Below are positions 2,358-23,251 of a stretch of DNA of 64,000 nucleotides, one piece after another. The notes under the pieces were generated by a model that was given only the letters and a program-made list of their open reading frames with translations, was not told where the DNA came from and ran no database searches. Within the stretch, counting starts at the first letter, position 1. Each line of letters starts with the position of its first letter. Made by a program: the position numbers and the translations under genes. The stretch lies in the IMG/VR virus record IMGVR_UViG_3300028920_000022, positions 62,001 through 126,000 of that record, one strand, 5' to 3'.

Positions 2358-2360
2358 TCA

Positions 2361-3017: not shown

Positions 3018-3020
3018 ACA

Positions 3021-3844: not shown

Positions 3845-3893
3845 TATACAAAAAGCTTGACCTTGATTCTAAAGAGTGATATAAGGGAACACA

Positions 3894-4415: not shown

Positions 4416-4431
4416 CAACCAGGGATAAAAG

Positions 4432-4713: not shown

Positions 4714-4744
4714 CAATCTAGTGTATTAGAGGTATAAACGGACT

Positions 4745-5521: not shown

Positions 5522-5522
5522 A

Positions 5523-5762: not shown

Positions 5763-5766
5763 ACCA

Positions 5767-6126: not shown

Positions 6127-6157
6127 CAGCCGGAATAATTGGCGGTATAAAGGAACC

Positions 6158-6391: not shown

Positions 6392-6432
6392 TCGGGGGGG
6401 GCGACACCCCAGGTTATCTCATAAGGAGAGCT

Positions 6433-6771: not shown

Positions 6772-6801
6772 TCCTGCTTGTGTTTGGTTGGAAGTTTGAC
6801 A

Positions 6802-7206
6802 ATGGATATCATTAGCGAATCTGGTGTAAGGGTATTACAGCGCACGATATTTGTGGTTTGTTTTGCTGTACTCGTTACTGTTGGATGCTGGTATTTTCTC
6901 AGTTTTCTGGAGCTTCCTGAAGTCGTATTAGTACCCATTGTCGCTTTTGTAGCGGTAATTGCTAGTGCCGGGGTTATTATATCTATTATCGAACATAACG
7001 ACGAGGAGGACGAGGAGGACGAGGAGGACGAGGAGGACGAGGAGGACGAGGAGGAATATCAAACCATACTGCACTATTCGCCAAACCCACACGCCGTTTC
7101 TGCGTGCGGGATGTGTGGCAGTTATACACTCGAATTAGAACATTGTACTTGTAAAGAATGCAGAAAAGCTGTTAATAATAGGAATGAGGCGTGGGGAAGA
7201 AATTAA
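6802..7206 (+). CDS. two-TM membrane protein with (DEE)6 acidic tract and C-terminal Cys cluster
   Basis: two hydrophobic segments, acidic repeat, CxxC motifs. Confidence 0.65.
   Translation: MDIISESGVRVLQRTIFVVCFAVLVTVGCWYFLSFLELPEVVLVPIVAFVAVIASAGVIISIIEHNDEEDEEDEEDEEDEEDEEEYQTILHYSPNPHAVSACGMCGSYTLELEHCTCKECRKAVNNRNEAWGRN
7000..7053 (+). repeat. perfect tandem repeat (GACGAGGAG)x6
   Basis: read directly. Confidence 0.95.
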
Positions 7207-7429
7207 AGCCTGGATAGACGAATCCAATTTTTCTGGTAATTTTGTGATTGTCGATGATGAGGCGGACATGGGTGATCTAATTGATCATTTAGTACGCACA
7301 TCTTACAATGGAGCCATGGGAAGCACCGGGCTAACCGTTGCACATACTAAAAGAATTATTGCAAGGCTGAACCGGGCGGAAATTAATTGGAATTGTTATC
7401 CTGAGCATTTAAGACCATTGAAAGCTTGA
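7184..7429 (+). pseudogene. C-terminal fragment of a HAD-family (HAD_SAK_2-like) protein
   Basis: RGEEIKAW..FVIVDD..DM...LVRT...GLT pattern present, N-terminal DxD motif absent. Confidence 0.5.
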
Positions 7430-7464
7430 CAAGGTTTCGCAATTGATGGTATAAGAGTTGAGTA

Positions 7465-7677
7465 ATGGTTAAGGAAAGAAAAGCTCAGTGGCGGCAGGAC
7501 ACGCCGCAACAACAGATGGTAGCTTTAACGCAAGCAATTGCTGGTTATGCTGTGTGGTTTGTTGAGGAGCCGGAAGCCTTAAAACCCGAGAACGTACAGA
7601 GAGTATTTCAAAACATAAACGAAAAGTGTGAGGATCTTTTCGAACTTTCCAATTGGATGGATTCACAATGGCAATGA
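7465..7677 (+). CDS. hypothetical protein
   Basis: behind promoter 7426-7455. Confidence 0.65.
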   Translation: MVKERKAQWRQDTPQQQMVALTQAIAGYAVWFVEEPEALKPENVQRVFQNINEKCEDLFELSNWMDSQWQ

Positions 7678-8537
7678 AGGCACAAAACCCCGAACTTTGG
7701 GCAGCACAACGGATTCTTGATCTTTTGGAGCAGGGCGGTCTTCCACCTTGGCGAAAGCCTTGGAAGGGCTGCGCAATGCCTCAGAACATGACGAGCCGGC
7801 GGGAATATAACGGATTGAACCGTTGGATGCTTCTCATGGCGCCTTATGGTTCTCCTTTTTATATCACCATTAAGCAGATCAACGCGCTTGGTGGCAAGAT
7901 TATCAAGGGAGAGAAGCCTTGGCCCGTTTTCTTCTGGCAGCGGATTGAGAAGGAACTAAAGGACGGCTCGACTCGTAATTATCTATTTTGCCGAGGTTAC
8001 AAGGTGTGGAATGTGGAGCAATGCGAAGGGCTACCGGAGGATAAGATTCCGGATCTTGAGGCTGAGCTTCATGAGCACGACACCATTGCGGAATGCGAGG
8101 CAATTGTTCAGGGATACGAAGGTGCTCCGGAGATTATTCCTGACATTGGTCGGTGTTACTATGCGCCACTGACTGACAAGGTTGGGATGGTTCCGATTGA
8201 GCATTTCGACACTGCTGAACATTATTACAGTGCTCTTTTTCATGAGTTTGCTCATTCCACGGGGCATGGGAGCCGATTGGACCGGGAGGGTTTGACGAAG
8301 CTGGTGGGGGAAGGCAGCCACGAATACAGTCAGGAGGAGCTGGTAGCGGAGTTTTGTTCGGCAATGTTGTGTGCGCAGGCAGGGATTGATCAAGAGGTGA
8401 TTGAGAATCAGGCGGCATACATTGCCGGGTGGCACAAGCGTCTACGTGGGGATCCGGAAGCATTGGTGTTTGCCAGTCGGGACGCAAACAAGGCATTCAA
8501 CCATATTGTTGGAAAAACCTATGAAACGGAAGAATAA
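7668..8537 (+). CDS. ardC: ArdC-like antirestriction ssDNA-binding protein (DUF1738 plus zincin-like domain)
   Basis: PPWRKPW, Y.G.N, HEFAHSTGH, EELVAE, AAYIAGW motifs. Confidence 0.88.
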   Translation: MAMKAQNPELWAAQRILDLLEQGGLPPWRKPWKGCAMPQNMTSRREYNGLNRWMLLMAPYGSPFYITIKQINALGGKIIKGEKPWPVFFWQRIEKELKDGSTRNYLFCRGYKVWNVEQCEGLPEDKIPDLEAELHEHDTIAECEAIVQGYEGAPEIIPDIGRCYYAPLTDKVGMVPIEHFDTAEHYYSALFHEFAHSTGHGSRLDREGLTKLVGEGSHEYSQEELVAEFCSAMLCAQAGIDQEVIENQAAYIAGWHKRLRGDPEALVFASRDANKAFNHIVGKTYETEE

Positions 8538-8540
8538 GCG

Positions 8541-8849
8541 ATGAAAACCGTTGAAGAGCTTATTGAAGAAGTTAGCGACCGTGGTGGGAAGCTTTTTGCC
8601 CGGCAGGATCTAGAATATATTGTTGTGGTAATTTTCCCGATTCCGAAGCTATGGAACCGATATGGTATCAACACCAGCACTTGGCAGGTCTGGGTTGAAT
8701 TATGGGACATTGATCGAAAGGTCAAGGACCATCAGGAGCTACTTGGGGAGGAGCCGATGGAAGAGGACTCACTGCAGCTGGTATTGCAGCATATTCTTGA
8801 CAAATTCTCTATTGAAGAGGAAAAGAGGCTAGTGGCAGCCTACGGTTAA
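8541..8849 (+). CDS. hypothetical protein
   Basis: ORF. Confidence 0.65.
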   Translation: MKTVEELIEEVSDRGGKLFARQDLEYIVVVIFPIPKLWNRYGINTSTWQVWVELWDIDRKVKDHQELLGEEPMEEDSLQLVLQHILDKFSIEEEKRLVAAYG

Positions 8850-8887
8850 GAAACGAATTCATTGAAAAAGAAAGAAGGAAAAAGAAG

Positions 8888-9181
8888 ATGAGTAGCACAC
8901 CGCCTCCACCCTGTGCCTGGTGTAAAAACTGGGGTAAAGGAAGTCCTAATTGTGATCACATCAACGAATGTCATGATGATAATGATTGGGAAAGGCTTAA
9001 TCCGGTAGCGAACTGGCAATGGGTTCGGTTGGTATGGTTCGTGAACGAGGTTGACAGTTCTGGCATGCATCCGAACGACAAATCGCACAATATTGCTGAC
9101 AAGCTCAGGACGATGATTGCTAATGGTTACAAACCTATTGTGGATAATTCACCAACGCTTGACAAGCTAGAAAGAGATTGA
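8888..9181 (+). CDS. hypothetical protein
   Basis: ORF with CxxC. Confidence 0.55.
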   Translation: MSSTPPPPCAWCKNWGKGSPNCDHINECHDDNDWERLNPVANWQWVRLVWFVNEVDSSGMHPNDKSHNIADKLRTMIANGYKPIVDNSPTLDKLERD

Positions 9182-9193
9182 TATAACATCCGG

Positions 9194-9436
9194 GTGAAGT
9201 ACACTTTAGAAGAAAAGCTAACGGGCAAGCGGAGCAAGCTGGTAGGGTCCACTTGTGAGGGATATGGACGAGAGCTATGTTCATGCGGGCGTGGGTATAT
9301 TGAATACCGGCGAGATCGCAATGGTGTAAAGATTTCTTTACACAGTGTGTATTTAGACAGCAAGAGTTTTGGTAGAATTGAAACGGCACCCTGTTGTGAG
9401 GAATGTGCGAGTGAGCAGTGGGAGTCGAAATGGTAA
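9194..9436 (+). CDS. Cys-rich hypothetical protein, leaderless GTG start
   Basis: GTG 6 nt after TATAAC of promoter 9159-9187. Confidence 0.65.
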   Translation: MKYTLEEKLTGKRSKLVGSTCEGYGRELCSCGRGYIEYRRDRNGVKISLHSVYLDSKSFGRIETAPCCEECASEQWESKW

Positions 9437-9863
9437 GTTGGCACCAAGTGGATCTAATATTAAGAAAGGTGCTCAACCCTACGTATAAGTGTTTCTTTTT
9501 AGTAAGAATTCCTTTACAACAGTTGGCTGGTTTAGACACAGACGCAGTAAAAAACTTAATAGAACGTGAATGTAAAGGATATGAGGAGCTTTTACATTAT
9601 TCATGTGAAAACAACGAATTAGTTATGAGGTTTGCGAAATATGAATAAATTAAACCTCGAAGAATTTCTATACGTTATGCGCATTGGAATTCCACTATCA
9701 ATAATGATTGGAATAGTCACATGGGTTGTTCTCTCACTTGTTGTTTGGGATTCTGCTACGCCTGTTGTGTCAGTATTTACTGAAATAAAGGTAAAGTCGG
9801 CACTACTAGAAATTCAACTTGATGGGCGACAAAAAGAAATAATGTCTGAGCTTACGGGGAAAC

Positions 9864-10286
9864 ATGAGTAAAATTATTTCTGTAGACGGCGGTGTAATCG
9901 AAACTTTTGGGTATAGTTTTAGTAAACAAAAGGAATCTATCAGCTCAGTAGGCAGGGTATACATAGGAAAAGGGGCGTATAAAGCGTCACCCAATTCTTG
10001 TAAATATAATAAAGCATACCTAATGAGTGTTGAAATATGTATCGAGGGAAAGCATTATAGCACCTGCTATAACATCATTGGCAAAAATATCAAGGATTTT
10101 CCTAACATTACTGGAAACGCTGGTGTTTTGCGGGCAATTCAGTTTGTTTTGGCTCGTCTCGATGGAGAAGAAATAACAAAGCTTATTGGATATATTTTCC
10201 AAGTTGGGTTTCGAGCAGGACAGCAGGATTTGCAAAAGAATCTTCGTACATTACTTGACATTGACCGAAGTATAGCCGAGTGGTAG
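9864..10286 (+). CDS. hypothetical protein
   Basis: ORF. Confidence 0.6.
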   Translation: MSKIISVDGGVIETFGYSFSKQKESISSVGRVYIGKGAYKASPNSCKYNKAYLMSVEICIEGKHYSTCYNIIGKNIKDFPNITGNAGVLRAIQFVLARLDGEEITKLIGYIFQVGFRAGQQDLQKNLRTLLDIDRSIAEW

Positions 10287-10357
10287 TATGTTGCATGTTA
10301 AGCGCACGAGAAATTGAACGAGCCTATTTAGAGCATCTTAAAGCTTAAAACGGGATA

Positions 10358-10807
10358 ATGATTCACACTTACGGAGAATTCGGCGTTGATCATGTACTGG
10401 ACATGGTTCGGGCAGCGTGGGGAAAAAGGAAATCAATTTACCTTGAGTGTGGAGGTTCATTATTCGTAGTTAGGGCATCTTCTCAGCGATACCGGTTATT
10501 CATGGAAAACCGAAAATGTGTTTGTTGCGGAGTAGAGGGAACAAAGTTTCTTTTACAATCGGACAAACGAAGGTGGATTTATTACGATGAGCAGAAGAGA
10601 ATAACTTATCCAATACCGGTATGGCGGGCTCATTTCAATCTTTTTGGTGAGCGCAATGGTGGCAAAGTGATGTTAACCAAAGATCATATTAAGCCGGTTT
10701 CTTTGGGTGGACGTTCAATAATGCCAAATTATCAAACCTTATGTGCCCTATGTAACCGAAGAAAAGGGGCAATGGAGATTAGATATGGTACGGGTGAAGG
10801 GAATTGA
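10358..10807 (+). CDS. HNH endonuclease
   Basis: CVCC...TKDHIKPVSLGG...NYQTLCALCNRRKG. Confidence 0.85.
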   Translation: MIHTYGEFGVDHVLDMVRAAWGKRKSIYLECGGSLFVVRASSQRYRLFMENRKCVCCGVEGTKFLLQSDKRRWIYYDEQKRITYPIPVWRAHFNLFGERNGGKVMLTKDHIKPVSLGGRSIMPNYQTLCALCNRRKGAMEIRYGTGEGN

Positions 10808-11116
10808 GAGCGGAGTAGCAGTTCAGATTGAGGAGCGCGGGAAGGTTGTTTGGGAGCATTATTTCCGAGACAATGGTACTGCGGCGGGGATAGCTCAGGC
10901 ATATCGTTTAGCTAACACGCTGGCTACACAACTTCGGCAGGATGAGAGAAAGATTAATTAATGCTTACTCCTGAACAAAAACAATTGGCAGCTCAGTGGT
11001 TGGTGGAAAAACTACGTGAAAGAAGCGATACGGCTGCGCAAAAGAAATTGTTGACGAACGACCGGAGCCAAAATAAGAACTTGACTTAGTTTCTTATTGA
11101 GTATATAGTTGCTGTC

Positions 11117-11440
11117 ATGGAAAACAAGGAACCAGCAGAATACAAGCGTTTGACCGACAAGCATCCCACCATGCAAAAGCTGCAAAAGTTGTGGGAACTG
11201 GCAGACGAACTGGGTATTCACATCGATTTTTACGGTCACAGAACCGTTGTGACTGACGATCAGTATCCTGATCGGATTTACGACATGATCGATCTTGATT
11301 CACCCGATGCTGCTATTTCAGAATTTCCTTATGCTTTTGAGGTTGCCCTGCGGTTTGAGAACAGGTTTAGCCCAACTGCATTTTGTCAAGGATTCAGATA
11401 TTGCTGCTGTAAGTACATATGTGGAGTCGTATCATATTGA
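11117..11440 (+). CDS. hypothetical protein, leaderless
   Basis: ATG 7 nt after TATAGT of promoter 11081-11109. Confidence 0.7.
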   Translation: MENKEPAEYKRLTDKHPTMQKLQKLWELADELGIHIDFYGHRTVVTDDQYPDRIYDMIDLDSPDAAISEFPYAFEVALRFENRFSPTAFCQGFRYCCCKYICGVVSY

Positions 11441-11494
11441 TACTGAAATTGGGTTGAGGTTGTTTGCGGATACAAATAAATTTTTGGTTTAACC

Positions 11495-11764
11495 ATGTTA
11501 TATACAATAGTTTTAATTTTGGTAGGAGCGCTCATATTCGTGGGAGTAAGCGCTGCGATTCTGGCTTATCTAAATAAATGCAGCCACGATTTTGAGTTGG
11601 TTGAACGAATCTACAGCGAGCCCAAACTGATCATATATGGCAGTCAAACAGGTGACGATCGGGACCGAGCGAGATACGGTTACACCACTTTGGTATTCAA
11701 ATGTTGTAAATGTCACAAGCTACGCAAAATTGGGGCGCTTGGTAAGTCATGCCACGCAAAGTAA
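11495..11764 (+). CDS. membrane-anchored hypothetical protein
   Basis: N-terminal TM, CxH..CCKC. Confidence 0.6.
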   Translation: MLYTIVLILVGALIFVGVSAAILAYLNKCSHDFELVERIYSEPKLIIYGSQTGDDRDRARYGYTTLVFKCCKCHKLRKIGALGKSCHAK

Positions 11765-12213
11765 AGGGTTATTTTTATCACATTAGTCAGCATCTTCCTC
11801 CTGAAGATTGTGTATTATCTCCTCGTTCGTGGGGAGAGAACAGGGATGAAGGAGAGCCTAAAATCGCTCGGGTATGTGTATGTCCAACCATATCTGGGTG
11901 CATTACTGCTATTGCTCACAATTTATTTGCACGAGACGTGAGGGTTTTTCGTACCAAGAGACAAGTAACTGCGGTAATTCCTTTTGGTAAAAATACGTGG
12001 GAAGAAATAAATACAGCAGTAGCGGATTCATTTATTACAAAAGAAAGATGGCTATTGCGTCCAATACATTTCAAGTTCGTTGGGTATTTTGATGCTAATC
12101 AATTTAGACATTTGTTTAACTACGTTCCGGGTGATCCAAGCAGCTTTTACGACCAGGAAATATGCATGAAAGAAATGCTGAAACTTGAAAAGAGCAGCAA
12201 TTTGCTGGGGTAA
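11749..12213 (+). CDS. hypothetical phage protein
   Basis: FYHIS..L.PR...E...RVCVCPTI.GC pattern seen in phage hypotheticals. Confidence 0.65.
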   Translation: MPRKVKGYFYHISQHLPPEDCVLSPRSWGENRDEGEPKIARVCVCPTISGCITAIAHNLFARDVRVFRTKRQVTAVIPFGKNTWEEINTAVADSFITKERWLLRPIHFKFVGYFDANQFRHLFNYVPGDPSSFYDQEICMKEMLKLEKSSNLLG

Positions 12214-12440
12214 CAAGATGAAAAATAAAACACGGGGCTCAGAAGTTAATATTCAGCTTAGGGCAAATCGGAAACCAGCTTCGATGTGCAACTGTTTAAT
12301 GTCCAGCCAGGATGCTAAGAGTTACGATCAATGTTGTGGTATTCATGGGGCTATGAGAGAACGTCGCGGCGCCAAGAAAGCTACCTCCGCAGCCCGCCGT
12401 AGAAACGATAAGATTGTAATTAGACAGTCTCTTGAGGAGT

Positions 12441-12665
12441 ATGAAATTATCTGAGATTATAGGCTGGGTTGGAATGGTACTCGTGTTGACCATGTACGGG
12501 TTAGCAGCGAACGGGATCCTGTTAGCCACCAGTTTTGTGTTTAATATTTTTAATATGTTTGGAGCCGTTTTTCTTGGTATATCTGCTTTTGCCACTAAGA
12601 ACTGGTCTATAGTTGCTTTAAATATAGTTTGGTGTGTATTAGCAATTACATCATTTTTAAAGTAG
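12441..12665 (+). CDS. small multi-TM membrane protein (CBU_0592-like)
   Basis: IIGW.G..LVL..Y; N..GA; W..VALN.VW. Confidence 0.55.
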   Translation: MKLSEIIGWVGMVLVLTMYGLAANGILLATSFVFNIFNMFGAVFLGISAFATKNWSIVALNIVWCVLAITSFLK

Positions 12666-12702
12666 TTGACGACACTTTAGTGTTTCTGTTATAAAGGTTC
12701 CC

Positions 12703-13011
12703 ATGAAGAACAAGAAAGAAAAAGTGGTACGAGCGGACTATCACGACAATGGTGACAAAGACAATTCGCTTGCCGGTTGGGCGGAAGTCATTCGTCAGCA
12801 AAGCGAGGAAATGCGCAAACAAGAACAGCAGCGCAAAGCAAAGCTGAACGAAAAACTTGCTGTCATTGAGGGTAAGGGGTTGGAGTTCGGAGATCGTGTT
12901 TTGGCTATTTTTGATCTTTATCGCGAGCGCTACATGATGTCTGGAGAGTTTTGTGAAAAGGTATTTAAGTGGGCTGCAGAGCAGCGTGGTATTGGAGAAG
13001 AGGATTATTGA
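12703..13011 (+). CDS. hypothetical protein, leaderless
   Basis: promoter 12666-12695. Confidence 0.7.
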   Translation: MKNKKEKVVRADYHDNGDKDNSLAGWAEVIRQQSEEMRKQEQQRKAKLNEKLAVIEGKGLEFGDRVLAIFDLYRERYMMSGEFCEKVFKWAAEQRGIGEEDY

Positions 13012-13768
13012 TCATGTTTAAACTGTTTTTTGCGCTGTTGGCTGGCATTGGCGCGGCAAGTATTGCTTGTATTTTTACCGGGAGCAGCCTGATTATTGGT
13101 TTGGTTGGCGGTTTGGTGATTATGGCGGTTCTTTTCAAAATGAAGTAGGAATGACCAATTACGACTACAACCTGCAGGAATCTTTTCTTAACCATGTAGC
13201 TGGTGATAAGGTATCTGCCGAACAGCTCCAACGTTTGGTGAAGCTAGGTTATCTTAACGAATCCCTCAAGCTTACCGACGAAGGCGAGGCTGAGGTTGCA
13301 TTGTTGAGGAATGGGTATTGCACAGTAATGATGGGTGTTTTTGGTCCACATACAGTTTGTAGAAAGCTATGAAACCACGAATTTGTAGAAAATGTTGTTA
13401 TAGCATTTGTTTACCAGACGAAGGCTGGTGCTGTGTTGTAAAAGGACTAGATATATCACCTGTGCCCGAAAAGGTGATACAAAACAATAAATGTTATGAT
13501 AAAATGAGCGAAATTGCTTGGAACAAAAAGTATGGCAAAATAGATCAGTTAGCCAAGGATTAACCAATGTACGCCATCAAAGATCGTACCCCGGCTGGCA
13601 CTTTCGATTTTGCCATATTTGAGACCAAGCGGCTGGCTCTTAGGGTTTTTAGAGAGCTACGGTTGGTGATAGATTTTTTGGAACAGGAATATATCATTCC
13701 GCCATTAGGTTTCAAAATGAGGAATTGGGAAAGCGCGTAGCGGCGGCAACTTTGGAAGGTTTTGGGCT

Positions 13769-14050
13769 ATGATTCCCGAATTGCATAATTGGTTTACAAA
13801 ACGCAGCGTATGGAAAGCGCCGGAGGATAACCCAATCCGAGTGGCAGGAGAAGTTTGGAATCATCCTGGTTTTCCCAACGGGCATAAGATTCAAACTTCC
13901 TCGCCAACCAGTTTCGATCCGCAGTCAAGGCTTTTGACTACAATTAGCGGATCGGTATATAGGTTGGAAAAACCAGATCCCGAATGGATCAAGTGGATGA
14001 GAGAACAAGGAATAGAATTCGATCCTGAAAATCCGATCAGGTTTACTTGA
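13769..14050 (+). CDS. hypothetical phage protein
   Basis: G.V..HP.F.NG..I.TS...T.SGSVY.L pattern. Confidence 0.7.
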   Translation: MIPELHNWFTKRSVWKAPEDNPIRVAGEVWNHPGFPNGHKIQTSSPTSFDPQSRLLTTISGSVYRLEKPDPEWIKWMREQGIEFDPENPIRFT

Positions 14051-14081
14051 CAGCCGCCTGCTTTTATGAGATAAAGGGTGT

Positions 14082-14669
14082 ATGAGTTGTTACATTAATG
14101 CACCAGCAACCAAACTACTAGCCACTCATTGCGCCTGTTGTGGGCGCCTATTGGTGGATTCTAAAAGTGTAGAGTGTGGAGTGGGACCGGAGTGTCGAAA
14201 AAAGCATGGTTATGGTGAAGCCCAGCATCTTCCCAATTGGGAAAAATTGCTAACGGTTCTGCTAATGCCATCGCCACCAGAGAGTCTAACCGAAGCTATT
14301 GCGATTCAAGACGCTCATCGCGCTGCTAATGTTTTGGTTTACCACATTGCTGCCCAACAATCGGGAGAATATGTTGAGCAATACGTGGAGGCGTTGGCGG
14401 CATTGGGTTATGTTAAACTAGCTCGACGAATGGTACAAAGACTAAATGGAATAATTGTTGATCAAGATGGGGCAACATTAGTGGTGCGTGGTCCCTATAA
14501 TCCTCAATTGGGAATTCGTTGGATTCCGGGGGCAGCATATAGCCGAAAAAGAGGTATTCGGTTTACTGCTCCAGCAGAATATAATAAATTGGTCTGGGAG
14601 GCGCTAAAGAATGCTTATAGAACAGGAACGTTGGTTGCTGGTTCTAAAGGGGTGAGAAAACTGGCTTGA
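14082..14669 (+). CDS. DUF6011-like zinc-finger protein, leaderless
   Basis: CACCGR.L.D..S...G.GPEC; promoter 14047-14075. Confidence 0.7.
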   Translation: MSCYINAPATKLLATHCACCGRLLVDSKSVECGVGPECRKKHGYGEAQHLPNWEKLLTVLLMPSPPESLTEAIAIQDAHRAANVLVYHIAAQQSGEYVEQYVEALAALGYVKLARRMVQRLNGIIVDQDGATLVVRGPYNPQLGIRWIPGAAYSRKRGIRFTAPAEYNKLVWEALKNAYRTGTLVAGSKGVRKLA

Positions 14670-14701
14670 CATTACAACGCGCATTATGGTATAAAGGGTT
14701 T

Positions 14702-14959
14702 ATGATTAAGCTGGAAAAAGAAATTCTCAAGGAAGCTCAGCATTGGGTTCCGAGAGCCAAGGTGCAGCAGATCCGATCTGCGCTTTTGAAGCTGACTCAT
14801 GGAGGGAAGCGGGCGAGGATTTTGGCGGTAGCCGAGGCTGCCGATTGTTCGCAGGCAATGATTGAGTTTTGCTATCAGGCGAATCTTCTCAAAGGATATA
14901 CACACCAATACGGTCGGCATGGCGGATTCACTAGAAAGCTGCATTTGGTTCTGGTATAG
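14702..14959 (+). CDS. putative winged-helix protein (start corrected, leaderless)
   Basis: YGRHGGF wing-like motif; promoter 14666-14695. Confidence 0.55.
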   Translation: MIKLEKEILKEAQHWVPRAKVQQIRSALLKLTHGGKRARILAVAEAADCSQAMIEFCYQANLLKGYTHQYGRHGGFTRKLHLVLV

Positions 14960-14972
14960 CAAAGGTAGAAAT

Positions 14973-15158
14973 ATGGATAACTGTGAGTGGTGTAACAAGC
15001 AAATTAGTAGTAATCCTTTTATCGGAGCTGACGGTGGCAAATATTGTTCCGAATATTGTCTAGCTGAGGCGGATGATGATTTGCCCGTCCGTCGGACTAA
15101 GGTTCGTCGGGTTCGTAAATCTGAGTTTTTTCAGGAGAAAAATGATGCGTCGCGTTAA
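14973..15158 (+). CDS. small zinc-finger protein
   Basis: CEWC...YCSEYC. Confidence 0.6.
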   Translation: MDNCEWCNKQISSNPFIGADGGKYCSEYCLAEADDDLPVRRTKVRRVRKSEFFQEKNDASR

Positions 15159-15247
15159 TTGTCCACATTGTGGCAGGTCTGATTGTGCGGTATATGCAGA
15201 AGACGGTTTGATTACTGCGATTTGCAGTGAGACTGGAAAGGTACGCA

Positions 15248-15502
15248 ATGATGCCAGCAGGGTATCTGATCCGGAGAATCCGAAGCGGCTGGTACGAAAT
15301 TAGCAAGTGGGGTGATTCCACGGAGCCTGAGGCTGTATATCTTTTACGAGAGACGCGAAAGGGTTGGAAGTGTTCCAGCCCGGGGTGTGGTCGAAAACTC
15401 AATTGTAAGCACTCCCAGATATTACAGAAATGGCTTTTGAAAAAGATCATGAATAATGTTATGCCGGAGAAGATGTTAAAAGAAAGCGGGGAAGAATTTT
15501 AA
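15248..15502 (+). CDS. SWIM-like zinc-finger protein
   Basis: WKCSSPGC...CKH. Confidence 0.5.
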   Translation: MMPAGYLIRRIRSGWYEISKWGDSTEPEAVYLLRETRKGWKCSSPGCGRKLNCKHSQILQKWLLKKIMNNVMPEKMLKESGEEF

Positions 15503-15848
15503 TGATTAAATGGTTCATTTTTTTCGTGCTGCGGTGCATTTGGTTTGCCTATTTGGTGCTGGAGTGTTATCGTGGCGACTGGGAATGGGCTCTATTCCTA
15601 TTCGTAGCAAGCATTGTGGTGTTGAAACTGTTCGGGTTTCCCAAGGATTAAAACGAGGATGACGATGAATACTGAACAAAAGCTAGAGATTGCGGTAAAA
15701 GCCTTGAAAAGAATTTGTTATCCTATCGAGGCTGACCAATTTTGTGACGAAGAATGGAAGCTTTGGCACAAGCAATATGAGGATGGTAGCCTAGAAGGTG
15801 AGGACGTCATTGCCTACCGGGCGCTTAAGGAACTTGGAGAATTTTAAC

Positions 15849-16145
15849 ATGGACGATCAAATTGGAAAGAAACACGTTTTCTCTTTTAACCCCAATGATA
15901 ATAATGGGGAGCAACTTATTCTAGTTACGAAATTTACTGATAATGGGGATGGTTATCCTGATGGCATTTATGTGACGCAGGAGTTGCGCTTTTTCAGCCA
16001 TTGCAACGCAGCAACTTTCTATCTGACAGGAGTCACTTTGAATCCTGAAAACTTGCGAGAGTTGGCTAACCAGTTGGAATCAGAAGAGATCAAGGCGGCG
16101 CTCGCGTACTCAGGCGAAGAAAGCTTGACACCCCAGAACAAGTAA
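15849..16145 (+). CDS. hypothetical protein
   Basis: GGAG SD; ORF. Confidence 0.65.
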   Translation: MDDQIGKKHVFSFNPNDNNGEQLILVTKFTDNGDGYPDGIYVTQELRFFSHCNAATFYLTGVTLNPENLRELANQLESEEIKAALAYSGEESLTPQNK

Positions 16146-16157
16146 GGTATAAGGGAC

Positions 16158-16270
16158 TTACAATAACAGAGCAGAGCCCGCCGGACGGTGCCAACGACAC
16201 GCAGCGGGTTTCCAGAAAACAAACTGGTGGCACAGTTGTTTGAAGGAAGGTTCGCCATGCTGCTCTTTGA
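16158..16270 (+). ncRNA. candidate structured ncRNA (own promoter 16125-16153)
   Basis: closing stem AGAGCAG/CTGCTCT, hairpins and pseudoknot GTGCCA/TGGCAC; no ORF. Confidence 0.5.
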
Positions 16271-16321
16271 TAAATATAACAGATAAGATAACAAGATAAA
16301 ACTTAAAATAACACTTAAATA

Positions 16322-16350
16322 AGAGCGCCATCTGCTGGGCAGGTGGCGCT
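16322..16350 (+). terminator. strong hairpin GAGCGCCATCTGC-TGG-GCAGGTGGCGCTC
   Basis: 13-bp stem between two promoter units. Confidence 0.65.
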
Positions 16351-16408
16351 CGTCTATTGTGGCGAAGAAAAAACTTGACATACCGGAATGGTTTCGGTTA
16401 TACTGTAG

Positions 16409-16662
16409 GAAAGAAACTAAGATTGATTAAGAGTTGGTGATTCCTGTTAGTTGAGTGTCAAGATTCACGCCCCTTTTAGGAATCTGCCAATAGGACAGAT
16501 TGGATTGGAGTTAATTCTCGCGATTCCATGTGGTGCGACGGTAGCCACGGCAGAAATGTCAAGCTGTCCACTTTTCCTTGACGTAGGCACGGCGGAAGTG
16601 ATAGTGTAGACAGACCATGGGAAAAGCCTCTTTGAGGCGTGCGGACGTGAAGAACATGGGTT
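16409..16662 (+). ncRNA. candidate ~250-nt structured ncRNA (promoter 16375-16404)
   Basis: multiple stems, no ORF longer than 17 codons noticed, bounded by promoter and terminator. Confidence 0.55.
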
Positions 16663-16693
16663 GAAACGCCGGGATTTTCCCGGCGTTTCTTTT
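16663..16693 (+). terminator. rho-independent terminator
   Basis: GAAACGCCGGGA-TTT-TCCCGGCGTTTC followed by TTTT. Confidence 0.85.
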
Positions 16694-16731
16694 ATGTTGA
16701 CTATCCAGTTTATTCGGTGTATAAGAAGAAC

Positions 16732-17271
16732 ATGGAATTGAAATTATCGGTTACAGCACCATCACCAAAGGTGGCAAAATCTGGAACTAGGGTAAAAACG
16801 AAGAAATCCAACTTCGATTTGTTCAAGTTTATGACCACCAAACGCCCTTGGCTGTATGTCAAACGGTTGGATGTTTTGGGTACTGGCTCTAGTCGTATCG
16901 TTTATATCGTTAATAACAAGTTGGTTATTAAGATGGCGTATGCTGGTTACGAATGTAGGGGAAACATTCTACCTATTGGTGCTGGCAAAACGCAAAATAA
17001 AGTCGAAGCCATGGTTTCTGCGGACCCTATGAGCAATGGTTTGGTTGCCAAGGTGTACGCGGCGGCGCCCGACTACCGCTGGATAATTGTAGAAAATTGT
17101 GATGAAGGCAGTGATCAGGATGATGATGATTTCGATTGGAAAGCCTTTGAAAAACTGAGCCAAAAGTATGATTTAAGGGACGATGATGATGTTCTTGGTA
17201 TAAACTCTGATAAGAAGCTAGTAATGCTTGACTATGGGCTCGATGGTGATGTATATAATGACTACTACTAG
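16732..17271 (+). CDS. minimal protein-kinase-fold protein, leaderless
   Basis: LGTGSSRIVY, VIK, helix-C E, LDYG (DFG-like); promoter 16697-16725. Confidence 0.65.
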   Translation: MELKLSVTAPSPKVAKSGTRVKTKKSNFDLFKFMTTKRPWLYVKRLDVLGTGSSRIVYIVNNKLVIKMAYAGYECRGNILPIGAGKTQNKVEAMVSADPMSNGLVAKVYAAAPDYRWIIVENCDEGSDQDDDDFDWKAFEKLSQKYDLRDDDDVLGINSDKKLVMLDYGLDGDVYNDYY

Positions 17272-17280
17272 GAGGTAGAC

Positions 17281-17457
17281 ATGCAAGGTAAGCTTAGGCA
17301 GTGGCGGGAAATGAAGCGAGAAGAAGCCAAGGAGCGTCAAAACGCCTGGGCAGTCCAGACTCCACAGCAACAGATCAAAGAGTTGGATCGGCGGCTTGGT
17401 AAGGGGTTGGGAGCCAAGAAGCAACGGGCAAAGATTGCTCGGCAAATGGAGGATTAG
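17281..17457 (+). CDS. small basic protein (58 aa, absent from ORF track)
   Basis: AGGAGG SD; MQGKLRQWREMKREEAKERQ... Confidence 0.65.
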   Translation: MQGKLRQWREMKREEAKERQNAWAVQTPQQQIKELDRRLGKGLGAKKQRAKIARQMED

Positions 17458-17715
17458 ATGGTATTCCCGGACGAACCGACCTGCCGTGAGTGTGGCGAAC
17501 AACTGTACCCACAAAATGATTACTGTATGAGCTGCGGTACATCGTTCGAAGAGGCTGCTCGTTTTGCAGCATCAGAAGCGTACCACGACCACCCTAGCAA
17601 TCCGTCTAGTTGTGCAGCGTACGCAGAGCACACCGGACGCAATGAACGCGAGTGCCCGTGCGAGCACGCCTGGTCGAAGTACCTGCCCGGCTGGGACGAG
17701 GACGGGGAGAAGTAA
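17458..17715 (+). CDS. zinc-ribbon protein
   Basis: CRECG...YCMSCG. Confidence 0.6.
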   Translation: MVFPDEPTCRECGEQLYPQNDYCMSCGTSFEEAARFAASEAYHDHPSNPSSCAAYAEHTGRNERECPCEHAWSKYLPGWDEDGEK

Positions 17716-17879
17716 TGGGACTCATTCTTATATGTTTGGCAGTAATAATTGCATATACGTCCGGTGGGCTCATTGGCAAAGGGGATATGGATACCGGTGA
17801 TATTGGTTACTGGGCAACGTCTGGGTTGTGTGCTATACTCGTGGTTGTAGGTTATTTCTGGAATAGGAAGTAGTTAATA

Positions 17880-17963
17880 CCGGGAGTGCTGGAACAGGAA
17901 TACAGAACTGGCTTAAAACCAGTCGGTGGAAACACCATAAGGGTTCGAATCCCTTCTCCCGGA
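17880..17963 (+). tRNA. tRNA-Leu (TAA)
   Basis: CCGGGAG/CTCCCGG; ACTGG-CTTAAAA-CCAGT; long variable arm; AAGGG-TTCGAAT-CCCTT. Confidence 0.93.
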
Positions 17964-17981
17964 CCGAACGAGAAAATTATT

Positions 17982-18533
17982 ATGTCACTTCGCTATCTTA
18001 ACGAATTTTCACAAACCAAATGTGCTGCAGATCTTTTAGCGCTCAAACTCTTTCCCAATGTTAAAGAGATTAGCGAAAGTTTTGGAGCATATAACGCTGT
18101 GCGTCGGCATTTGTGGAAAACATTTCAACCCCACAATGCCGATTGTCATATGGTGGCGGTAGGGGACGGAGTATCTCCGAGAACCGCTGCTACGTTTGCT
18201 TTTAGGACTGCCTGGCAATGTCACAGTGTGGATCCGAAACTGCGTGGAGGAAAATGGTACAATCCAATTCGACGCAATAAACTACAGCGCGTGACCCTCT
18301 GGACCATGCCGGTCGAAAAGATGGTGAGCTGGAAACCTGTAGAACACTTGGTAATCGTAGCAGTACATTCGCATGCAGATTTACGGGAGGCTGTTCGAGC
18401 ATTGCCTGCCAAGCATGTTGGAGTGGTGGCGATTGAGTGTTGTGTTCCGCAAGAACTTGACCGGGCTCCGGACATTCAATATGAGGATTTTGGTATACTT
18501 AGCCCTAAACGCACAGTGAAGGTTTGGAAATGA
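17982..18533 (+). CDS. putative Rossmann/SAM-methyltransferase-like protein (start corrected)
   Basis: VAVGDGVSPRTAA..AF...W...SVDP motif. Confidence 0.45.
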   Translation: MSLRYLNEFSQTKCAADLLALKLFPNVKEISESFGAYNAVRRHLWKTFQPHNADCHMVAVGDGVSPRTAATFAFRTAWQCHSVDPKLRGGKWYNPIRRNKLQRVTLWTMPVEKMVSWKPVEHLVIVAVHSHADLREAVRALPAKHVGVVAIECCVPQELDRAPDIQYEDFGILSPKRTVKVWK

Positions 18534-19391
18534 TTGATTTGGGGCAAGGATTAAGAGATATTTGTGAAGCGGGAGGCGTTGCGCTTATTTGTGAGCTTAA
18601 TGACGCCGGTTCTGTGCTGGTTACTTGGGATCGTAAAAATACTATTACAATTTGGCAGCCAGCGATTCCTTTTGGTCCTTCAGATTGTTGGAAAGAGGAA
18701 AAAAGTGTAAGAATAGATGGACGTTATCCTGGCGGTATGACTTTTAAAGAGGCGGATCATCATGCGCGTGTGGAGTTGAATAGGTATGTCAAGAATATCT
18801 CATTCGTGCCAAATATGTCGAATAACAAAGAGGATATATAATAATGTGTTTATTAGATTCCACGAAGATGTTTTAAACATTGTATATGAGTATGGGTTTG
18901 ATCCTGAAGCCATTGAGAGAATTAAGGCTCTAGGTTATCTTTTTTATAAAAACCAAGCAGGTAACTATAAATTTTTCGATAAACGTATGGCGCGAGTAGT
19001 AATGCAGCAACTTATACGAACAGTCAGCGGAACGTGTTCAACAGAAAGAAAAAACCCACAAAAAGACCTTGAGCACTTTTGTAATCTGGATAATCATCTG
19101 GAGATTAATCCGGAGAACTTGAAACAATGGTTGCTTAGTTATTACGGTGATGAGGGTTTTATTCTTATACCATTACAATATAGAAATAAAATGTTGAGAT
19201 TGTTGGATGTCGAATAACGAATTAGAAACAACCAGAGCCCAACTAGATCGTATGCGCGCACAGCTGCATTCGTACAGGGTGGCTTTGGTTTGGATGGCGA
19301 ATGAAAAACATTGCCGCCATAATAAAGATGGTGGTGTTTGCCTAGCTTGTTATGCTAGAATGCTGTTATTGCCAACTAAGGAAGAATAATT

Positions 19392-19892
19392 ATGCGTATC
19401 AAATGTGACAAATGTGGAAAAGAACACGCATGTGGGCATGAACAAACTTGTAGGATTTGTGGGACGCATGTGTGCACTAGCTGTTCCTCCAGAATTAAAT
19501 TCGAGGATTACAAAAGTAAAAAGAGGGTTTGTAACGATTGTGCGCATACGTACCGTAATGGCGATGAATCCGCAGAATGTCGTCGCTGGCGTAAATTGGT
19601 AGAAATGATGTTACCATCGGTGTGTAATCCGATTGTGGAAAGCATTGCTCAGAAAGCGGTTTCTCGTCGACAAGCGCCTACCACATCTTCTTTGAAAACA
19701 GGTGGAGAACCAAAGTTTTCTATGCTAATTCCTGTGATGGATACAGAGAAATTGCGGCAGGATCTTGGTATGCTAGATGAGCCGACCATTGATGGTGTGC
19801 TTAATTTTTGTCATAACGATCCATATTATGCCCAATCGTTGGAACGAAGGTATGGAAAACCCCTTTCAGAATTGAGAGAAATTGCCAGATGA
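19392..19892 (+). CDS. Cys-rich (FYVE-like) zinc-finger protein
   Basis: several CxxC pairs. Confidence 0.55.
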   Translation: MRIKCDKCGKEHACGHEQTCRICGTHVCTSCSSRIKFEDYKSKKRVCNDCAHTYRNGDESAECRRWRKLVEMMLPSVCNPIVESIAQKAVSRRQAPTTSSLKTGGEPKFSMLIPVMDTEKLRQDLGMLDEPTIDGVLNFCHNDPYYAQSLERRYGKPLSELREIAR

Positions 19893-20163
19893 CTTGGAAT
19901 GAATTAATTACCACTCGTGACCCGCGCTGTCCTGGTTGCGGGCACGTCCACCCACGAAAGAAAACTTGGGGAACCTTTGTGGTAAAGACAGATTATTGTC
20001 GGCGGGATCATAAGTATCTCACTAATAAAAAAGGCGAACCAAGTCATTGCAAATGGGTTGGTTATTTGACGGAAGAAGATTATTTGAAAGGTTTGCCTAG
20101 AAACGGTCTTGATAATACTGCGGAGGACTAAAATAGGTGTCGTTTTTGCGCAGGAGATACACA

Positions 20164-22371: not shown

Positions 22372-22452
22372 GGGGCAGTAGCATAGTCCGGTTTAATGCA
22401 GCTGACTTTTAATCAGAAGAATTCGTGGGTTCGAATCCCACCTGCCCCACCA
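22372..22452 (+). tRNA. tRNA-Lys (TTT) with encoded CCA
   Basis: GGGGCAG/CTGCCCC; CT-TTT-AA loop; GTGGG-TTCGAAT-CCCAC; ACCA end. Confidence 0.93.
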
Positions 22453-22453
22453 A

Positions 22454-23251
22454 TCAACTTGAATGATTTTTAATTCTCTTTCGGATAGCGTTATCTGAAA
22501 CACCTAGTTGTCTTCCTACTTCTGAATAATTGGAAGATTTCAGTATTTTTTGTAGCTCTTCGGTTTTCGGCCAATTAATTTTGAATGTCCTTTTCCTGGT
22601 GCGAGCTTCACAGGAGTTACAACTTTTTGACTTTTTTCCTATCCTTTTACCACAGGAACATTTATTTATAGTATTAGGTTTGGGTGGTTTTGGTGGTTTT
22701 GGTGGAATTTTAGTTGGCGCTTCTGTGTTAATGTGCCTGATTCTATGGCAGTTTGAACATAGCAAATCGCATTTATCTAACTCTGGTTTAATTTTTTCGA
22801 TAGATGAAACGCTGGAACCGAAACCTGTTTCTTTTTGGTTTGGGTCTCTATGATGAAAGTCAAAAGCAGCAGGGTTTCCCGAGTATCCACAATCAAGACA
22901 TTTACCGCCAAGATATTTAACTGCTGCAATTTTTAATCGCCTTTGTCTATTGCGTGTCTGTTCTTTAAGACAACTTTTACACCACGATATGGGAACTCTT
23001 TGAGAGGAATCGGATCTTCTTTTTCTAGTAAAGAAGTCGTTTTTAATATCTTTTTCTTTCTTACAGTTAGAGCAGGTCTTTTTAGTTTTATTATTGCATG
23101 GTGGATATTTTTCTAATGTGACTGTGTTATGTTGTTTGTAAGGCGAGCAATCCAAACAATATTTCCTATTTTGTAGATTTACTATTTTATCGTTTATTGT
23201 TATATTTATTCTAAAGTTTTTTCCGCATAATGCGCATATTTTAGTTTTCAT
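22454..23251 (-). CDS. HNH homing endonuclease with zinc-finger and C-terminal HTH domains
   Basis: CLDCG...FDFHHRDP...KCDLLCSNCHR..H; YSEVGRQLGVSDNAIRKR. Confidence 0.88.
   Translation of the reverse strand: MKTKICALCGKNFRINITINDKIVNLQNRKYCLDCSPYKQHNTVTLEKYPPCNNKTKKTCSNCKKEKDIKNDFFTRKRRSDSSQRVPISWCKSCLKEQTRNRQRRLKIAAVKYLGGKCLDCGYSGNPAAFDFHHRDPNQKETGFGSSVSSIEKIKPELDKCDLLCSNCHRIRHINTEAPTKIPPKPPKPPKPNTINKCSCGKRIGKKSKSCNSCEARTRKRTFKINWPKTEELQKILKSSNYSEVGRQLGVSDNAIRKRIKNHSS

What the first reader, a model, noticed from the sequence alone, without database searches (positions are those of the whole stretch)
16375..16693. Stand-alone ~250-nt structured transcript with its own promoter and terminator
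Seen: TTGACA-18-TATACT promoter, then stems GATTCCT/AGGAATC, AATCTG/CAGATT (mutually exclusive with the first), TGGAGTT/GATTCCA, GTGG/CCAC, and ATGTCAAG/CTTGACGT whose loop can pair downstream (CTGTC/GACAG, CACTT/AAGTG) as a pseudoknot, then GCCTC/GAGGC and a textbook terminator. The longest ORFs noticed are 15-17 codons. Inference: an unannotated phage ncRNA (ribozyme, protein sponge or guide scaffold).
Basis: partly seen in the sequence, partly recalled or inferred. Interest (0 to 1): 0.65.

Follow-up and report, generated by a model that had tools for sequence, protein, structure and literature searches.

The report
Gene-less early transcript in a huge phage
A 459-kb phage carries a strong promoter and a textbook terminator that bracket about 284 bases with no gene, one of two such units side by side. 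The transcription signals look real, but the claimed RNA fold is no better than chance and no relative exists to test it.

Summary
The transcription signals are real and more than chance. TTGACA-18-TATACT (16375-16404) belongs to a phage-wide promoter family found only on the + strand: 14 sites against 0 on the - strand and 1.3 expected. The hairpin at 16663-16689 plus its T-run is one of the two strongest terminators in 60 kb. No credible ORF lies between them. In most promoters of this family an ATG follows 6-7 nt after the -10; this one has none.

I also found a second gene-less unit just upstream: P16125 to terminator 16323-16351. Together the two fill the longest ORF-free stretch of the window (571 nt).

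The "structured" part is not supported:
- The body without the terminator folds at z = -1.0.
- Stems of at least 7 bp number 17, against 16.5 expected.
- The proposed pseudoknot is matched or beaten by 38% of shuffles.
- There is no Rfam hit.

The phage is a singleton (IMG/VR contig, 458,729 bp) and no homologue was found anywhere, so covariation cannot be tested.

The units are bounded by composite terminator+promoter modules, like the PeSL cassettes of T4-type phages, and these carry traces of duplication. My best reading is a discrete, untranslated early transcript that is probably a by-product of cassette shuffling (about 0.4). A true trans-acting sRNA is the main rival (about 0.3). Ribozyme or guide readings have no support.

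The parts
16093..16138 (+). Promoter module A: a half stem-loop remnant, an A-rich element and the -35, inside the 3' end of the 115-aa ORF. It is a duplicate of module B.
   Evidence: Local alignment with 16341-16388 scores 35 against 12.8 +/- 2.0 in shuffles, 0 of 300 as good.
16125..16153 (+). Promoter P_A: TTGACA, 17 nt, TATAAG. The inferred start is about 16160 and no start codon follows.
   Evidence: 11/12 match, member of the + strand-only family.
16160..16355 (+). Unit A, a second gene-less promoter-to-terminator unit of about 195 nt. It has a folded 5' part, an AT-rich GATAA-repeat tract (16262-16320) and terminator T_A.
   Evidence: No ORF of 40 aa or more. The body folds at z = -1.86. 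Repeats.
16323..16351 (+). Terminator T_A: a 13-bp hairpin at -24.2 kcal/mol with a weak T-run.
16341..16388 (+). Promoter module B: the 3' arm of T_A, an A-tract and the -35. It is a duplicate of module A.
16375..16404 (+). Promoter P_B (the finding): TTGACA, 18 nt, TATACT, with an A-tract just upstream. The inferred start is about 16411.
   Evidence: The start site is inferred from the usual 7-nt distance, not measured.
16411..16694 (+). Unit B, the predicted untranslated transcript of about 284 nt. The predicted fold has a 22-nt open 5' tail, hairpin 16433-16491, a four-way junction 16493-16569, an irregular hairpin 16577-16652 and the terminator.
   Evidence: Fold. The fold is not significant. 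No coding signal.
16451..16609 (+). Longest ORF inside unit B: 52 codons with a TTG start and no Shine-Dalgarno. Probably not a gene.
   Evidence: Codon score 0.116 against 0.315 +/- 0.130 for 52-codon in-frame windows of genes. The only database hit is a spurious WD40 repeat match.
16617..16664 (+). 15-codon mini-ORF MGKASLRRADVKNMG with no Shine-Dalgarno. Its stop codon overlaps the first bases of the terminator stem.
16649..16659 (+). First copy of the exact 11-nt direct repeat GAAGAACATGG. The second copy is at 16725-16735 and contains the ATG of the next gene. The pair brackets the terminator+promoter module.
   Evidence: About 5% of shuffles of the region contain any such repeat.
16663..16695 (+). 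Terminator T_B: a 12-bp perfect hairpin at -21.0 kcal/mol followed by a T-run. It acts on the + strand only.
16697..16725 (+). Promoter P_C: TTGACT, 17 nt, TATAAG, with the ATG 6 nt after the -10.
16732..17271 (+). Downstream gene of 179 aa (phrog_4301, function unknown). It has its own promoter and so is not dependent on unit B.

Best explanation
Unit B is a discrete early transcription unit with no gene. Host sigma-70 RNA polymerase would start near 16411 from a promoter of the phage's own early family. It would stop at the intrinsic terminator 16663-16695, releasing an untranslated RNA of about 284 nt. It is the second of two such units in tandem. Both are bounded by composite 'terminator hairpin + early promoter' modules of the kind called PeSL in T4-type phages. 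Those modules drive cassette shuffling in variable regions full of orphan genes. The locus carries traces of such events: a duplicated 46-48-nt promoter module, and an 11-nt exact repeat bracketing the terminator+promoter in front of the next gene. The RNA body shows no fold, coding signal or target match beyond chance. It is therefore most likely an orphaned leader or spacer that is transcribed as a by-product of cassette insertion. At most it insulates neighbouring units; it was probably not selected for a specific fold. Shown: the signals, the lack of an ORF, the duplications and the lack of structural signal. Inferred: that it is transcribed, where it starts, and that it has no sequence-specific function.
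For: The promoter family is strand-specific and enriched: 14, 0 and 1.3 expected. In 17 of 26 family sites an ATG follows within 6-11 nt of the -10, 6-7 nt in most, and 16 of them open ORFs of 39-295 codons. P_A and P_B have none. T_A and T_B are the two strongest + strand terminator hairpins in 60 kb. The locus is the longest ORF-free stretch of the window. Each terminator lies just upstream of the next promoter's -35, the PeSL layout described in PMC4122927. Modules A and B share 46-48 nt, scoring 35 against 12.8 +/- 2.0. The only relative of the upstream protein stops aligning at 16082, just before module A. An 11-nt exact repeat brackets T_B+P_C and includes the next gene's ATG. The body fold has z = -1.04, and stem count and pseudoknot are at chance. 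Coding signal is low in all three frames. No Rfam match and no homologue were found. Both flanking genes are orphans, as expected in a hyperplastic region.
Against: Phage genomes are tightly packed, and 571 nt of useless DNA is the exception here. Both gene-less units keep near-consensus promoters and perfect hairpins although no trace of an ORF is left. That pattern fits selection on the RNAs themselves, unless the insertions are recent. The two best terminators of the window sit exactly at the ends of the two gene-less units, as expected for stable RNAs. Only 2 of about 26 promoters have a strong hairpin upstream. The PeSL likeness therefore rests on this locus alone, and the 11-nt repeat is only p about 0.05. 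Lack of thermodynamic signal does not exclude a functional sRNA.
Confidence: 0.4

Rival explanations
1. Unit B, and perhaps unit A, is a true trans-acting regulatory RNA made early in infection. It would act by base pairing through its open 5' tail or loops, or by titrating a host protein, with the terminator hairpin giving stability.
For: It has its own strong promoter, a canonical terminator and no ORF. Signals are perfectly preserved around a body with no coding trace. The predicted 5' tail of 22 nt is single-stranded and A/U-rich. The 7-mer TGTCAAG, the complement of the phage's -35 box with its flank, occurs twice in the body out of 8 in 64 kb, once in a predicted open loop. It could pair with promoter sequences carried inside read-through mRNAs. 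Gene-less transcription units and sRNAs have been mapped experimentally in giant phages (PMC11512511).
Against: No homologue, so no conservation or covariation. No Rfam family. The best duplex with 161 phage start regions, -52.3 kcal/mol, lies inside the shuffled range of -53.0 to -43.5. The fold is not better than chance. The TGTCAAG observation was made after the fact. The host is unknown, so host targets could not be tested.
Confidence: 0.3
2. Unit B is a cis-acting leader of the 179-aa gene: an attenuator, a riboswitch, or a lambda pR'-tR'-like unit read through by an antiterminator. The terminator would be the regulated step.
For: The order promoter, about 250 nt, terminator, gene is the classic layout. 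The mini-ORF's stop codon overlaps the terminator stem, so a terminating ribosome could block the hairpin. The 11-nt repeat suggests the body was once continuous with the gene start.
Against: The gene has its own family promoter with the ATG at +6. No pairing between the body and the 5' arm of the terminator exceeds chance: -13.9 against -15.2 +/- 2.1 in shuffles. No riboswitch or leader family in Rfam. The mini-ORF has no Shine-Dalgarno.
Confidence: 0.08
3. The unit encodes one or more small proteins: the 52-codon TTG ORF, or the 15- to 17-codon ORFs.
For: The ORFs exist. The 52-aa product has a hydrophobic stretch. The 15-codon ORF has a gene-like codon score of 0.26. A weak internal promoter-like site, TTGACG-16-GATAGT, lies 11 nt before its ATG.
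Against: No Shine-Dalgarno before any of them, and no ATG at the transcript start, unlike the phage's other units. The 52-codon ORF scores low on codon usage. Its only hit among 1.84 billion representatives is a summed WD40-repeat artefact.
Confidence: 0.08
4. The signals are chance or relics, and no discrete RNA is made.
For: All evidence is sequence-based. The promoter scan as a whole finds no more sites than shuffles do at the 9/12 level. The spacer is 18 nt and the -10 is TATACT, not the family's usual TATAA[G/A].
Against: At 11/12 or better the family is 14 to 0 by strand, with 1.3 expected. A perfect 12-bp G+C-rich hairpin with a T-run on the correct strand follows about 260 nt later.
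Confidence: 0.07
5. The locus is a replication origin, and the transcripts prime DNA synthesis as in T4 or T7 origins or ColE1 RNA II.
For: Gene-less promoters lie next to a 59-nt tract with GATAA repeats, about 72% A+T over 16250-16309.
Against: The AT-rich tract lies in unit A, upstream of P_B, not downstream of it. Cumulative GC skew rises monotonically through the locus with no inflection. No initiator gene is adjacent.
Confidence: 0.04
6. One reading: a structured catalytic or guide RNA, such as a ribozyme or a scaffold for an RNA-guided protein.
For: Only the listed stems and a possible loop-to-downstream pairing.
Against: Stems and pseudoknot are at chance level and z = -1.04. No ribozyme, tracrRNA, omega-RNA or other family at E<10. 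No repeats or spacer-like segments. No nuclease, transposase or RT gene among the neighbours.
Confidence: 0.03

Closest known systems
PeSL (promoter-early stem-loop) cassettes of T4-type phages (Arbiol et al. 2010; Comeau et al. 2014, PMC4122927)
   Same: A terminator-like hairpin lies directly upstream of an A-rich element and a sigma-70-type early promoter that abuts the next start codon. The setting is a region of small orphan genes. Partial or duplicated copies sit next to apparent rearrangement points.
   Different: The cassettes enclosed by the modules here hold no ORF. Only this locus of the window shows strong hairpins before promoters. Only modules A and B are alike in sequence. The phage is not a T4-type phage in the strict sense: its rIIA is about 26% identical to T4's. 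No sister genome exists to show indels at the modules.
Intergenic sRNAs and CDS-less transcription units mapped in giant phages, e.g. 201phi2-1 (PMC11512511) and phiKZ (PMC8244752)
   Same: Short promoter-to-terminator units without a coding sequence in a very large phage genome, with function unknown.
   Different: Those were found by transcript mapping, and one is conserved across genera with a shared fold. This one is predicted from sequence only, has no homologue, and uses host-type sigma-70 promoters rather than phage RNA polymerase promoters.
Lambda pR'-tR' '6S' transcript and oop RNA (from general knowledge, not tested here)
   Same: Short, constitutively made, untranslated phage transcripts defined by a strong promoter and an intrinsic terminator.
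   Different: The lambda 6S transcript is the unextended form of the late operon under Q antitermination, and oop is antisense to cII. Here the next gene has its own promoter and nothing lies antisense.
Hfq-type bacterial sRNAs
   Same: Own promoter, open 5' region, and a 3' intrinsic terminator hairpin with a U tail.
   Different: At about 284 nt it is at the long end. No conserved seed or target could be shown, and there is no Rfam match.

Membership tests
Any Rfam 15 family (ribozymes, riboswitches, 6S, tmRNA, sRNAs, guide RNAs) | Covariance-model score at or above the family's gathering score | tested here: not met
   Only three tRNAs pass in the window. At E<10 the best match in 16100-16760 is RcsR1 at 24.4 bits against a gathering score of 60, and it is carried by the terminator.
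PeSL cassette (T4-type phages) | Stem-loop immediately upstream of a sigma-70-like early promoter | tested here: met
   T_A ends 23 nt before the -35 of P_B. T_B ends 7 nt before the -35 of P_C.
PeSL cassette (T4-type phages) | Shine-Dalgarno and start codon of a downstream gene at the 3' end of the element | tested here: not met
   Met for P_C (ATG 16732). P_A and P_B, including the promoter of the finding, have no start codon.
PeSL cassette (T4-type phages) | Many sequence-similar copies across the variable regions of the genome | tested here: inconclusive
   Modules A and B share 46-48 nt. Other promoters share the boxes and an A-rich upstream element but lack strong hairpins. Only 64 of 459 kb could be read.
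PeSL cassette (T4-type phages) | Association with insertions, deletions or swaps between closely related phages | not testable with these tools
   No related genome was found.
Trans-acting base-pairing sRNA | Independent promoter and intrinsic terminator, with no translated ORF | tested here: met
   at sequence level only.
Trans-acting base-pairing sRNA | Conserved seed with target complementarity beyond chance | tested here: inconclusive
   The phage start regions in the window give no duplex better than shuffled RNAs do. Host and host targets are unknown, and there are no homologues to define a seed.
Terminator-controlled leader (riboswitch or attenuator) | Alternative antiterminator pairing with the terminator's 5' arm | tested here: not met
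   Best pairing is -13.9 kcal/mol against -15.2 +/- 2.1 in shuffles.
Terminator-controlled leader (riboswitch or attenuator) | Downstream gene depends on the upstream promoter | tested here: not met
   The downstream gene has its own family promoter with the ATG at +6, at sequence level.
Guide-RNA scaffold (tracrRNA, omega RNA, bridge RNA, retron msr/msd) | Adjacent effector gene (Cas, TnpB/IscB, IS110 recombinase, RT) and a repeat or guide segment | tested here: not met
   The neighbours are small orphans with no such Pfam or PHROG domains. No repeat array is present.
Structured RNA in general | Fold energy or covariation beyond background | tested here: not met
   Energy: z = -1.04, at the 27th percentile of phage windows. 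Covariation is not testable because there are no homologues.

The most novel reading that the evidence does not exclude
Two tandem, independently transcribed non-coding RNAs (about 195 and 284 nt) are made immediately after infection from host-type promoters of a 459-kb uncultivated phage. They would act in trans. For example, unit B could use its two UGUCAAG elements, the complement of the phage's own -35 box, to pair with promoter sequences embedded in read-through polycistronic mRNAs. Alternatively it could act on host transcripts or proteins. That would be a family of early phage regulatory RNAs with no known relative.
Probability: 0.25. Interest if true: 0.55.

Novelty: new member of a known kind. 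Interest (0 to 1): 0.3.

Why it matters
If the RNA is functional, it would be one of very few regulatory RNAs known from lytic or giant phages. It would also be expressed from a host-type early promoter, so it could be tested in a surrogate host by cloning about 350 bp.

If it is a by-product, the locus is still useful. It would be an example of terminator+promoter cassette shuffling, known from T4-type phages, operating in a very distant 459-kb phage and leaving 'empty' transcribed cassettes, which are possible raw material for new genes or RNAs.

The more robust result is the promoter grammar found along the way, in which the -10 lies 6-7 nt before the ATG. It gives a direct way to annotate early genes of this phage and to spot exceptions such as these two units.

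Tried and rejected
- Rfam at gathering level for the whole window and at E<10 for the locus: nothing credible.
- blastn (11-nt words) of the locus against 50,697 phage records, PLSDB plasmids and complete E. coli genomes: no match.
- Exact-word scans with 18- to 25-mers from four parts of the RNA: IMG/VR three times, JGI metagenomes once, GTDB genomes once. Only the source contig was found.
- Synteny route through the flanking proteins:
  - The downstream 179-aa protein has no relative among 5.8 billion proteins and no tblastn hit in phages.
  - The upstream protein has one 61% relative, on a 1,960-nt contig with no similar RNA.
  - An anti-restriction gene 8 kb upstream has 36-42% relatives, on contigs with neither the RNA nor this promoter style.
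- A gapped pattern for the promoter module gave 89 stretches, at about the number I estimated for chance, none with the RNA by nhmmer.
- No paralogue of the locus in the window by blastn or six-frame tblastn.
- Units A and B are not similar to each other in their bodies.
- Stop-codon reassignment: stops of all three kinds occur in every frame.
- The - strand 120-aa ORF 16019-16381 scores like spurious antisense ORFs.
- The 52-aa ORF's only hit is a WD40 artefact.
- No antiterminator beyond chance.
- Pseudoknot and stems at chance level.
- A first genome-wide duplex scan timed out. The reduced scan of 161 start regions gave nothing beyond shuffles.
- tRNA-like, tmRNA, 6S, CsrB-like (GGA count near expectation, by eye) and T-box readings were considered and dropped for lack of any match.
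- Structure prediction, fold search and complex prediction were not used, because no protein claim needed them.

Full report
**Source and setting.** The window is positions 62,001-126,000 of IMGVR_UViG_3300028920_000022 (= Ga0272441_10000008), a 458,729-bp phage contig.
- Apart from one HNH endonuclease gene, all genes lie on the + strand.
- rIIA/rIIB-like, RNA ligase and DNA ligase genes sit at 54-61 kb.
- rIIA is only about 26% identical to T4's, and DNA similarity to any of 50,697 phage records is negligible.
- The phage is therefore a singleton. This fixes the main limit of the study: nothing can be compared.

**Check of the observation.**
- Promoter: it scores 11/12. Relaxing the last -10 base revealed a promoter family, TTGACA, 17-18 nt, TATAA[G/A/T]. 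It has 14 sites at 11/12 or better on the + strand and none on the - strand, against 1.3 +/- 1.2 expected per strand.
- Terminator: it is a perfect 12-bp G+C-rich hairpin (-21.0 kcal/mol) followed by a T-run, and it has no T-run on the other strand. With the hairpin at 16323-16351 (-24.2 kcal/mol) it is the strongest + strand terminator in the 60 kb scanned.
- ORF-free stretch: 16146-16716 (571 nt) is the longest stretch without a + strand ORF of 60 aa or more. The next longest is 256 nt.

**The internal structure is not supported.**
- The z-score of -3.0 for the whole unit comes from the terminator.
- The body 16411-16655 gives z = -1.04 on the + strand and -1.02 on the - strand. 27% of 213 same-size windows of this phage fold at least as well.
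- Stems of 7 bp or more: 17 observed, 16.5 +/- 4.5 in shuffles.
- Loop-to-downstream 'pseudoknot': -10.3 kcal/mol against -9.9 +/- 2.0, matched or beaten by 38% of shuffles.
- A fold can still be drawn, with an open 22-nt 5' tail, hairpin 16433-16491, four-way junction 16493-16569 and hairpin 16577-16652. It has no statistical standing.

**The promoter grammar and a second unit.**
- In 17 of 26 family sites on the + strand an ATG follows within 6-11 nt of the -10, at 6-7 nt in most of them. Sixteen of these open ORFs of 39-295 codons.
- Transcripts from these promoters would be leaderless or nearly so.
- The -10 (TATAAGG or TATAAAGG) also looks like a ribosome-binding site for read-through transcripts. 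This second point is an inference.
- The gene after the finding follows the rule: TTGACT 16697, 17 nt, TATAAG 16725, six bases, ATG 16732. It therefore does not need the upstream promoter.
- Two family promoters near the finding break the rule by having no start codon and no ORF. One is P_B, the finding. The other is P_A (TTGACA 16125, 17 nt, TATAAG 16153), whose transcript would end at terminator 16323-16351.
- There are thus two tandem gene-less promoter-to-terminator units: A (about 16160-16355) and B (about 16411-16694).

**Coding tests.**
- All three kinds of stop codon occur in all six frames, so no single reassignment opens a gene.
- Codon-usage scores are low in all three + frames. The best of three averages 0.057 against 0.218 +/- 0.145 for gene windows.
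- The 52-codon TTG ORF lacks a Shine-Dalgarno and scores 0.116. Its only hit among 1.84 billion representative proteins is a summed match to WD40 repeats.
- The 15-codon ORF has no Shine-Dalgarno.
- The - strand 120-aa ORF scores like spurious antisense ORFs.

**Search for relatives.**
- Rfam found nothing at gathering level. At E<10 there was only terminator-driven noise.
- blastn against phages, plasmids and E. coli genomes found nothing.
- Exact-word scans of IMG/VR, JGI metagenomes and GTDB genomes found only the source contig.
- The flanking proteins are orphans. The one partial relative of the upstream protein, and two distant relatives of a gene 8 kb upstream, lie on contigs without the RNA.
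- These tools cannot run a profile search over whole collections, so diverged homologues are not excluded.

**Tests of rival mechanisms.**
- Leader or attenuator: no pairing of the body with the terminator's 5' arm exceeds chance, and the next gene has its own promoter.
- Trans-acting sRNA on phage targets: the best duplex with 161 start regions lies within the shuffled range. The host is unknown.
- Guide scaffold or ribozyme: there is no family match, no repeats and no effector gene nearby.
- Origin of replication: the AT-rich GATAA tract lies in unit A, and the GC skew shows no inflection.

**Architecture and history of the locus.** Each terminator sits directly before the next promoter, 23 nt and 7 nt before the -35. 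This is the composite that Comeau, Arbiol and Krisch call PeSL in T4-type phages. It consists of a stem-loop, an AT-rich element, a sigma-70-like early promoter and the next gene's start. It lies in hyperplastic regions of orphan genes and is implicated in cassette insertion, deletion and exchange, with degraded half copies nearby (PMC4122927). Three traces of such events are visible here.
- First, the 46-48 nt running from the 3' arm of T_A through the -35 of P_B is duplicated at 16093-16138. That copy lies inside the 3' end of the upstream ORF, where only half of the stem remains. The alignment scores 35 against 12.8 +/- 2.0 in shuffles.
- Second, the upstream protein's only relative stops aligning at 16082, just before that module.
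- Third, an exact 11-nt repeat, GAAGAACATGG, brackets T_B+P_C, and its second copy holds the ATG of the next gene. About 5% of shuffles of the region hold any 11-nt repeat, so this is suggestive only.

The repeat fits insertion of a terminator+promoter module just in front of the 179-aa gene. That event would have orphaned what lay upstream.

**Weighing the readings.**
- By-product reading, about 0.4. In favour: the recombination traces, the orphan-gene setting, and a body with no fold, coding or target signal.
- Functional RNA reading, about 0.3. In favour: the genome is tightly packed, yet two gene-less units keep near-consensus promoters and perfect hairpins with no ORF trace. The two best terminators of the window close exactly these units. 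TGTCAAG, the complement of the -35 box with its flank, occurs twice in unit B out of 8 copies in 64 kb; this was noticed after the fact.
- Gene-less transcription units and sRNAs have been mapped in giant phages (PMC11512511; PMC8244752). Either way the object is a new member of a known kind.
- I put the chance that a discrete RNA of about 284 nt is made at roughly 0.75-0.8. This is inferred, not measured.

**Verdict.** Interest is modest (0.3). The promoter grammar and the pair of empty cassettes are the more solid results.

Noticed in passing
window 569-62215, + strand (e.g. 1072, 1538, 4710, 6123, 12666, 14047, 14666, 16697, 29405, 38431, 52173): A phage-wide promoter family, TTGACA, 17-18 nt, TATAA[G/A/T], on the + strand only: 14 sites against 0, with 1.3 expected. 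In 17 of 26 sites an ATG follows within 6-11 nt of the -10, at 6-7 nt in most. This implies leaderless or near-leaderless early mRNAs. The -10 (TATAAGG) also looks like a ribosome-binding site for read-through transcripts.
   Followed up: partly
window 16125-16355: A second gene-less promoter-to-terminator unit (unit A, about 195 nt) directly upstream of the finding. Its body folds at z = -1.86. It holds a 9-codon ORF (ATG 16257, MLLFDKYNR) behind a good GAAGGAAGG ribosome-binding site.
   Followed up: partly
window 16262-16320: An AT-rich tract with about five GATAA/AGATAA repeats, including a 20-nt tandem pair at 16273-16312, between the folded part of unit A and its terminator. It could be a protein-binding or unwinding element. 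Unexplained.
   Followed up: no
window 16093-16138 and 16341-16388: A duplicated promoter module of 46-48 nt: half or whole terminator arm, A-rich element and -35. One copy lies inside the 3' end of the 115-aa ORF. That ORF's only relative (P0003, 61% identical) stops aligning just before it.
   Followed up: yes
window 16649-16659 and 16725-16735: An exact 11-nt direct repeat, GAAGAACATGG, brackets the terminator+promoter module. The second copy contains the start codon of the 179-aa gene. It looks like the footprint of a module insertion.
   Followed up: partly
window 16456-16462, 16557-16563, 16577-16583: Unit B holds TGTCAAG twice, the complement of the -35 box with its flank; once it is TGTCAAGC, the exact complement of the extended GCTTGACA. 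It also holds one forward CTTGACG. Only 8 TGTCAAG occur in 64 kb. None of the - strand -35 boxes they form has a -10 partner.
   Followed up: partly
window 16541-16558 and 16583-16600: An internal 18-nt repeat in unit B, GTAGCCACGGCAGAAATG and GTAGGCACGGCGGAAGTG (15 of 18 identical), 42 nt apart. Possibly a duplicated binding site or a slippage product.
   Followed up: no
window 16732-17271: The 179-aa product (phrog_4301, unknown function, no relative among 5.8 billion proteins) carries motifs reminiscent of a minimal protein kinase: LGTGSSRIVY, then VIK, then MLDYG. This was read by eye. No Pfam or PDB match.
   Followed up: partly
window 2361-2448, 17880-17965, 22372-22452, 46016-46087: Four tRNA genes: Tyr-GTA, Leu-TAA, Lys-TTT and Ile-TAT. 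The listed ORF 17886-18533 overlaps tRNA-Leu, so its real start must be later. The only - strand gene, an HNH endonuclease (22454-23251), abuts tRNA-Lys.
   Followed up: no
window 36147-36299: A TTGACA promoter-like site is followed by about 130 nt of hairpin-rich leader (e.g. CCGGCTGAGC...GCTAGCCGG) before ATG 36300. This is a long structured 5' UTR in a phage where most leaders are absent.
   Followed up: no
window 1-20000 against 20001-64000: G+C is higher in the first 20 kb (about 45.5%, locally up to 51%) than in the whole window (41.4%; mostly 36-43% after 20 kb). The high-GC part is also where the consensus promoters are densest.
   Followed up: no
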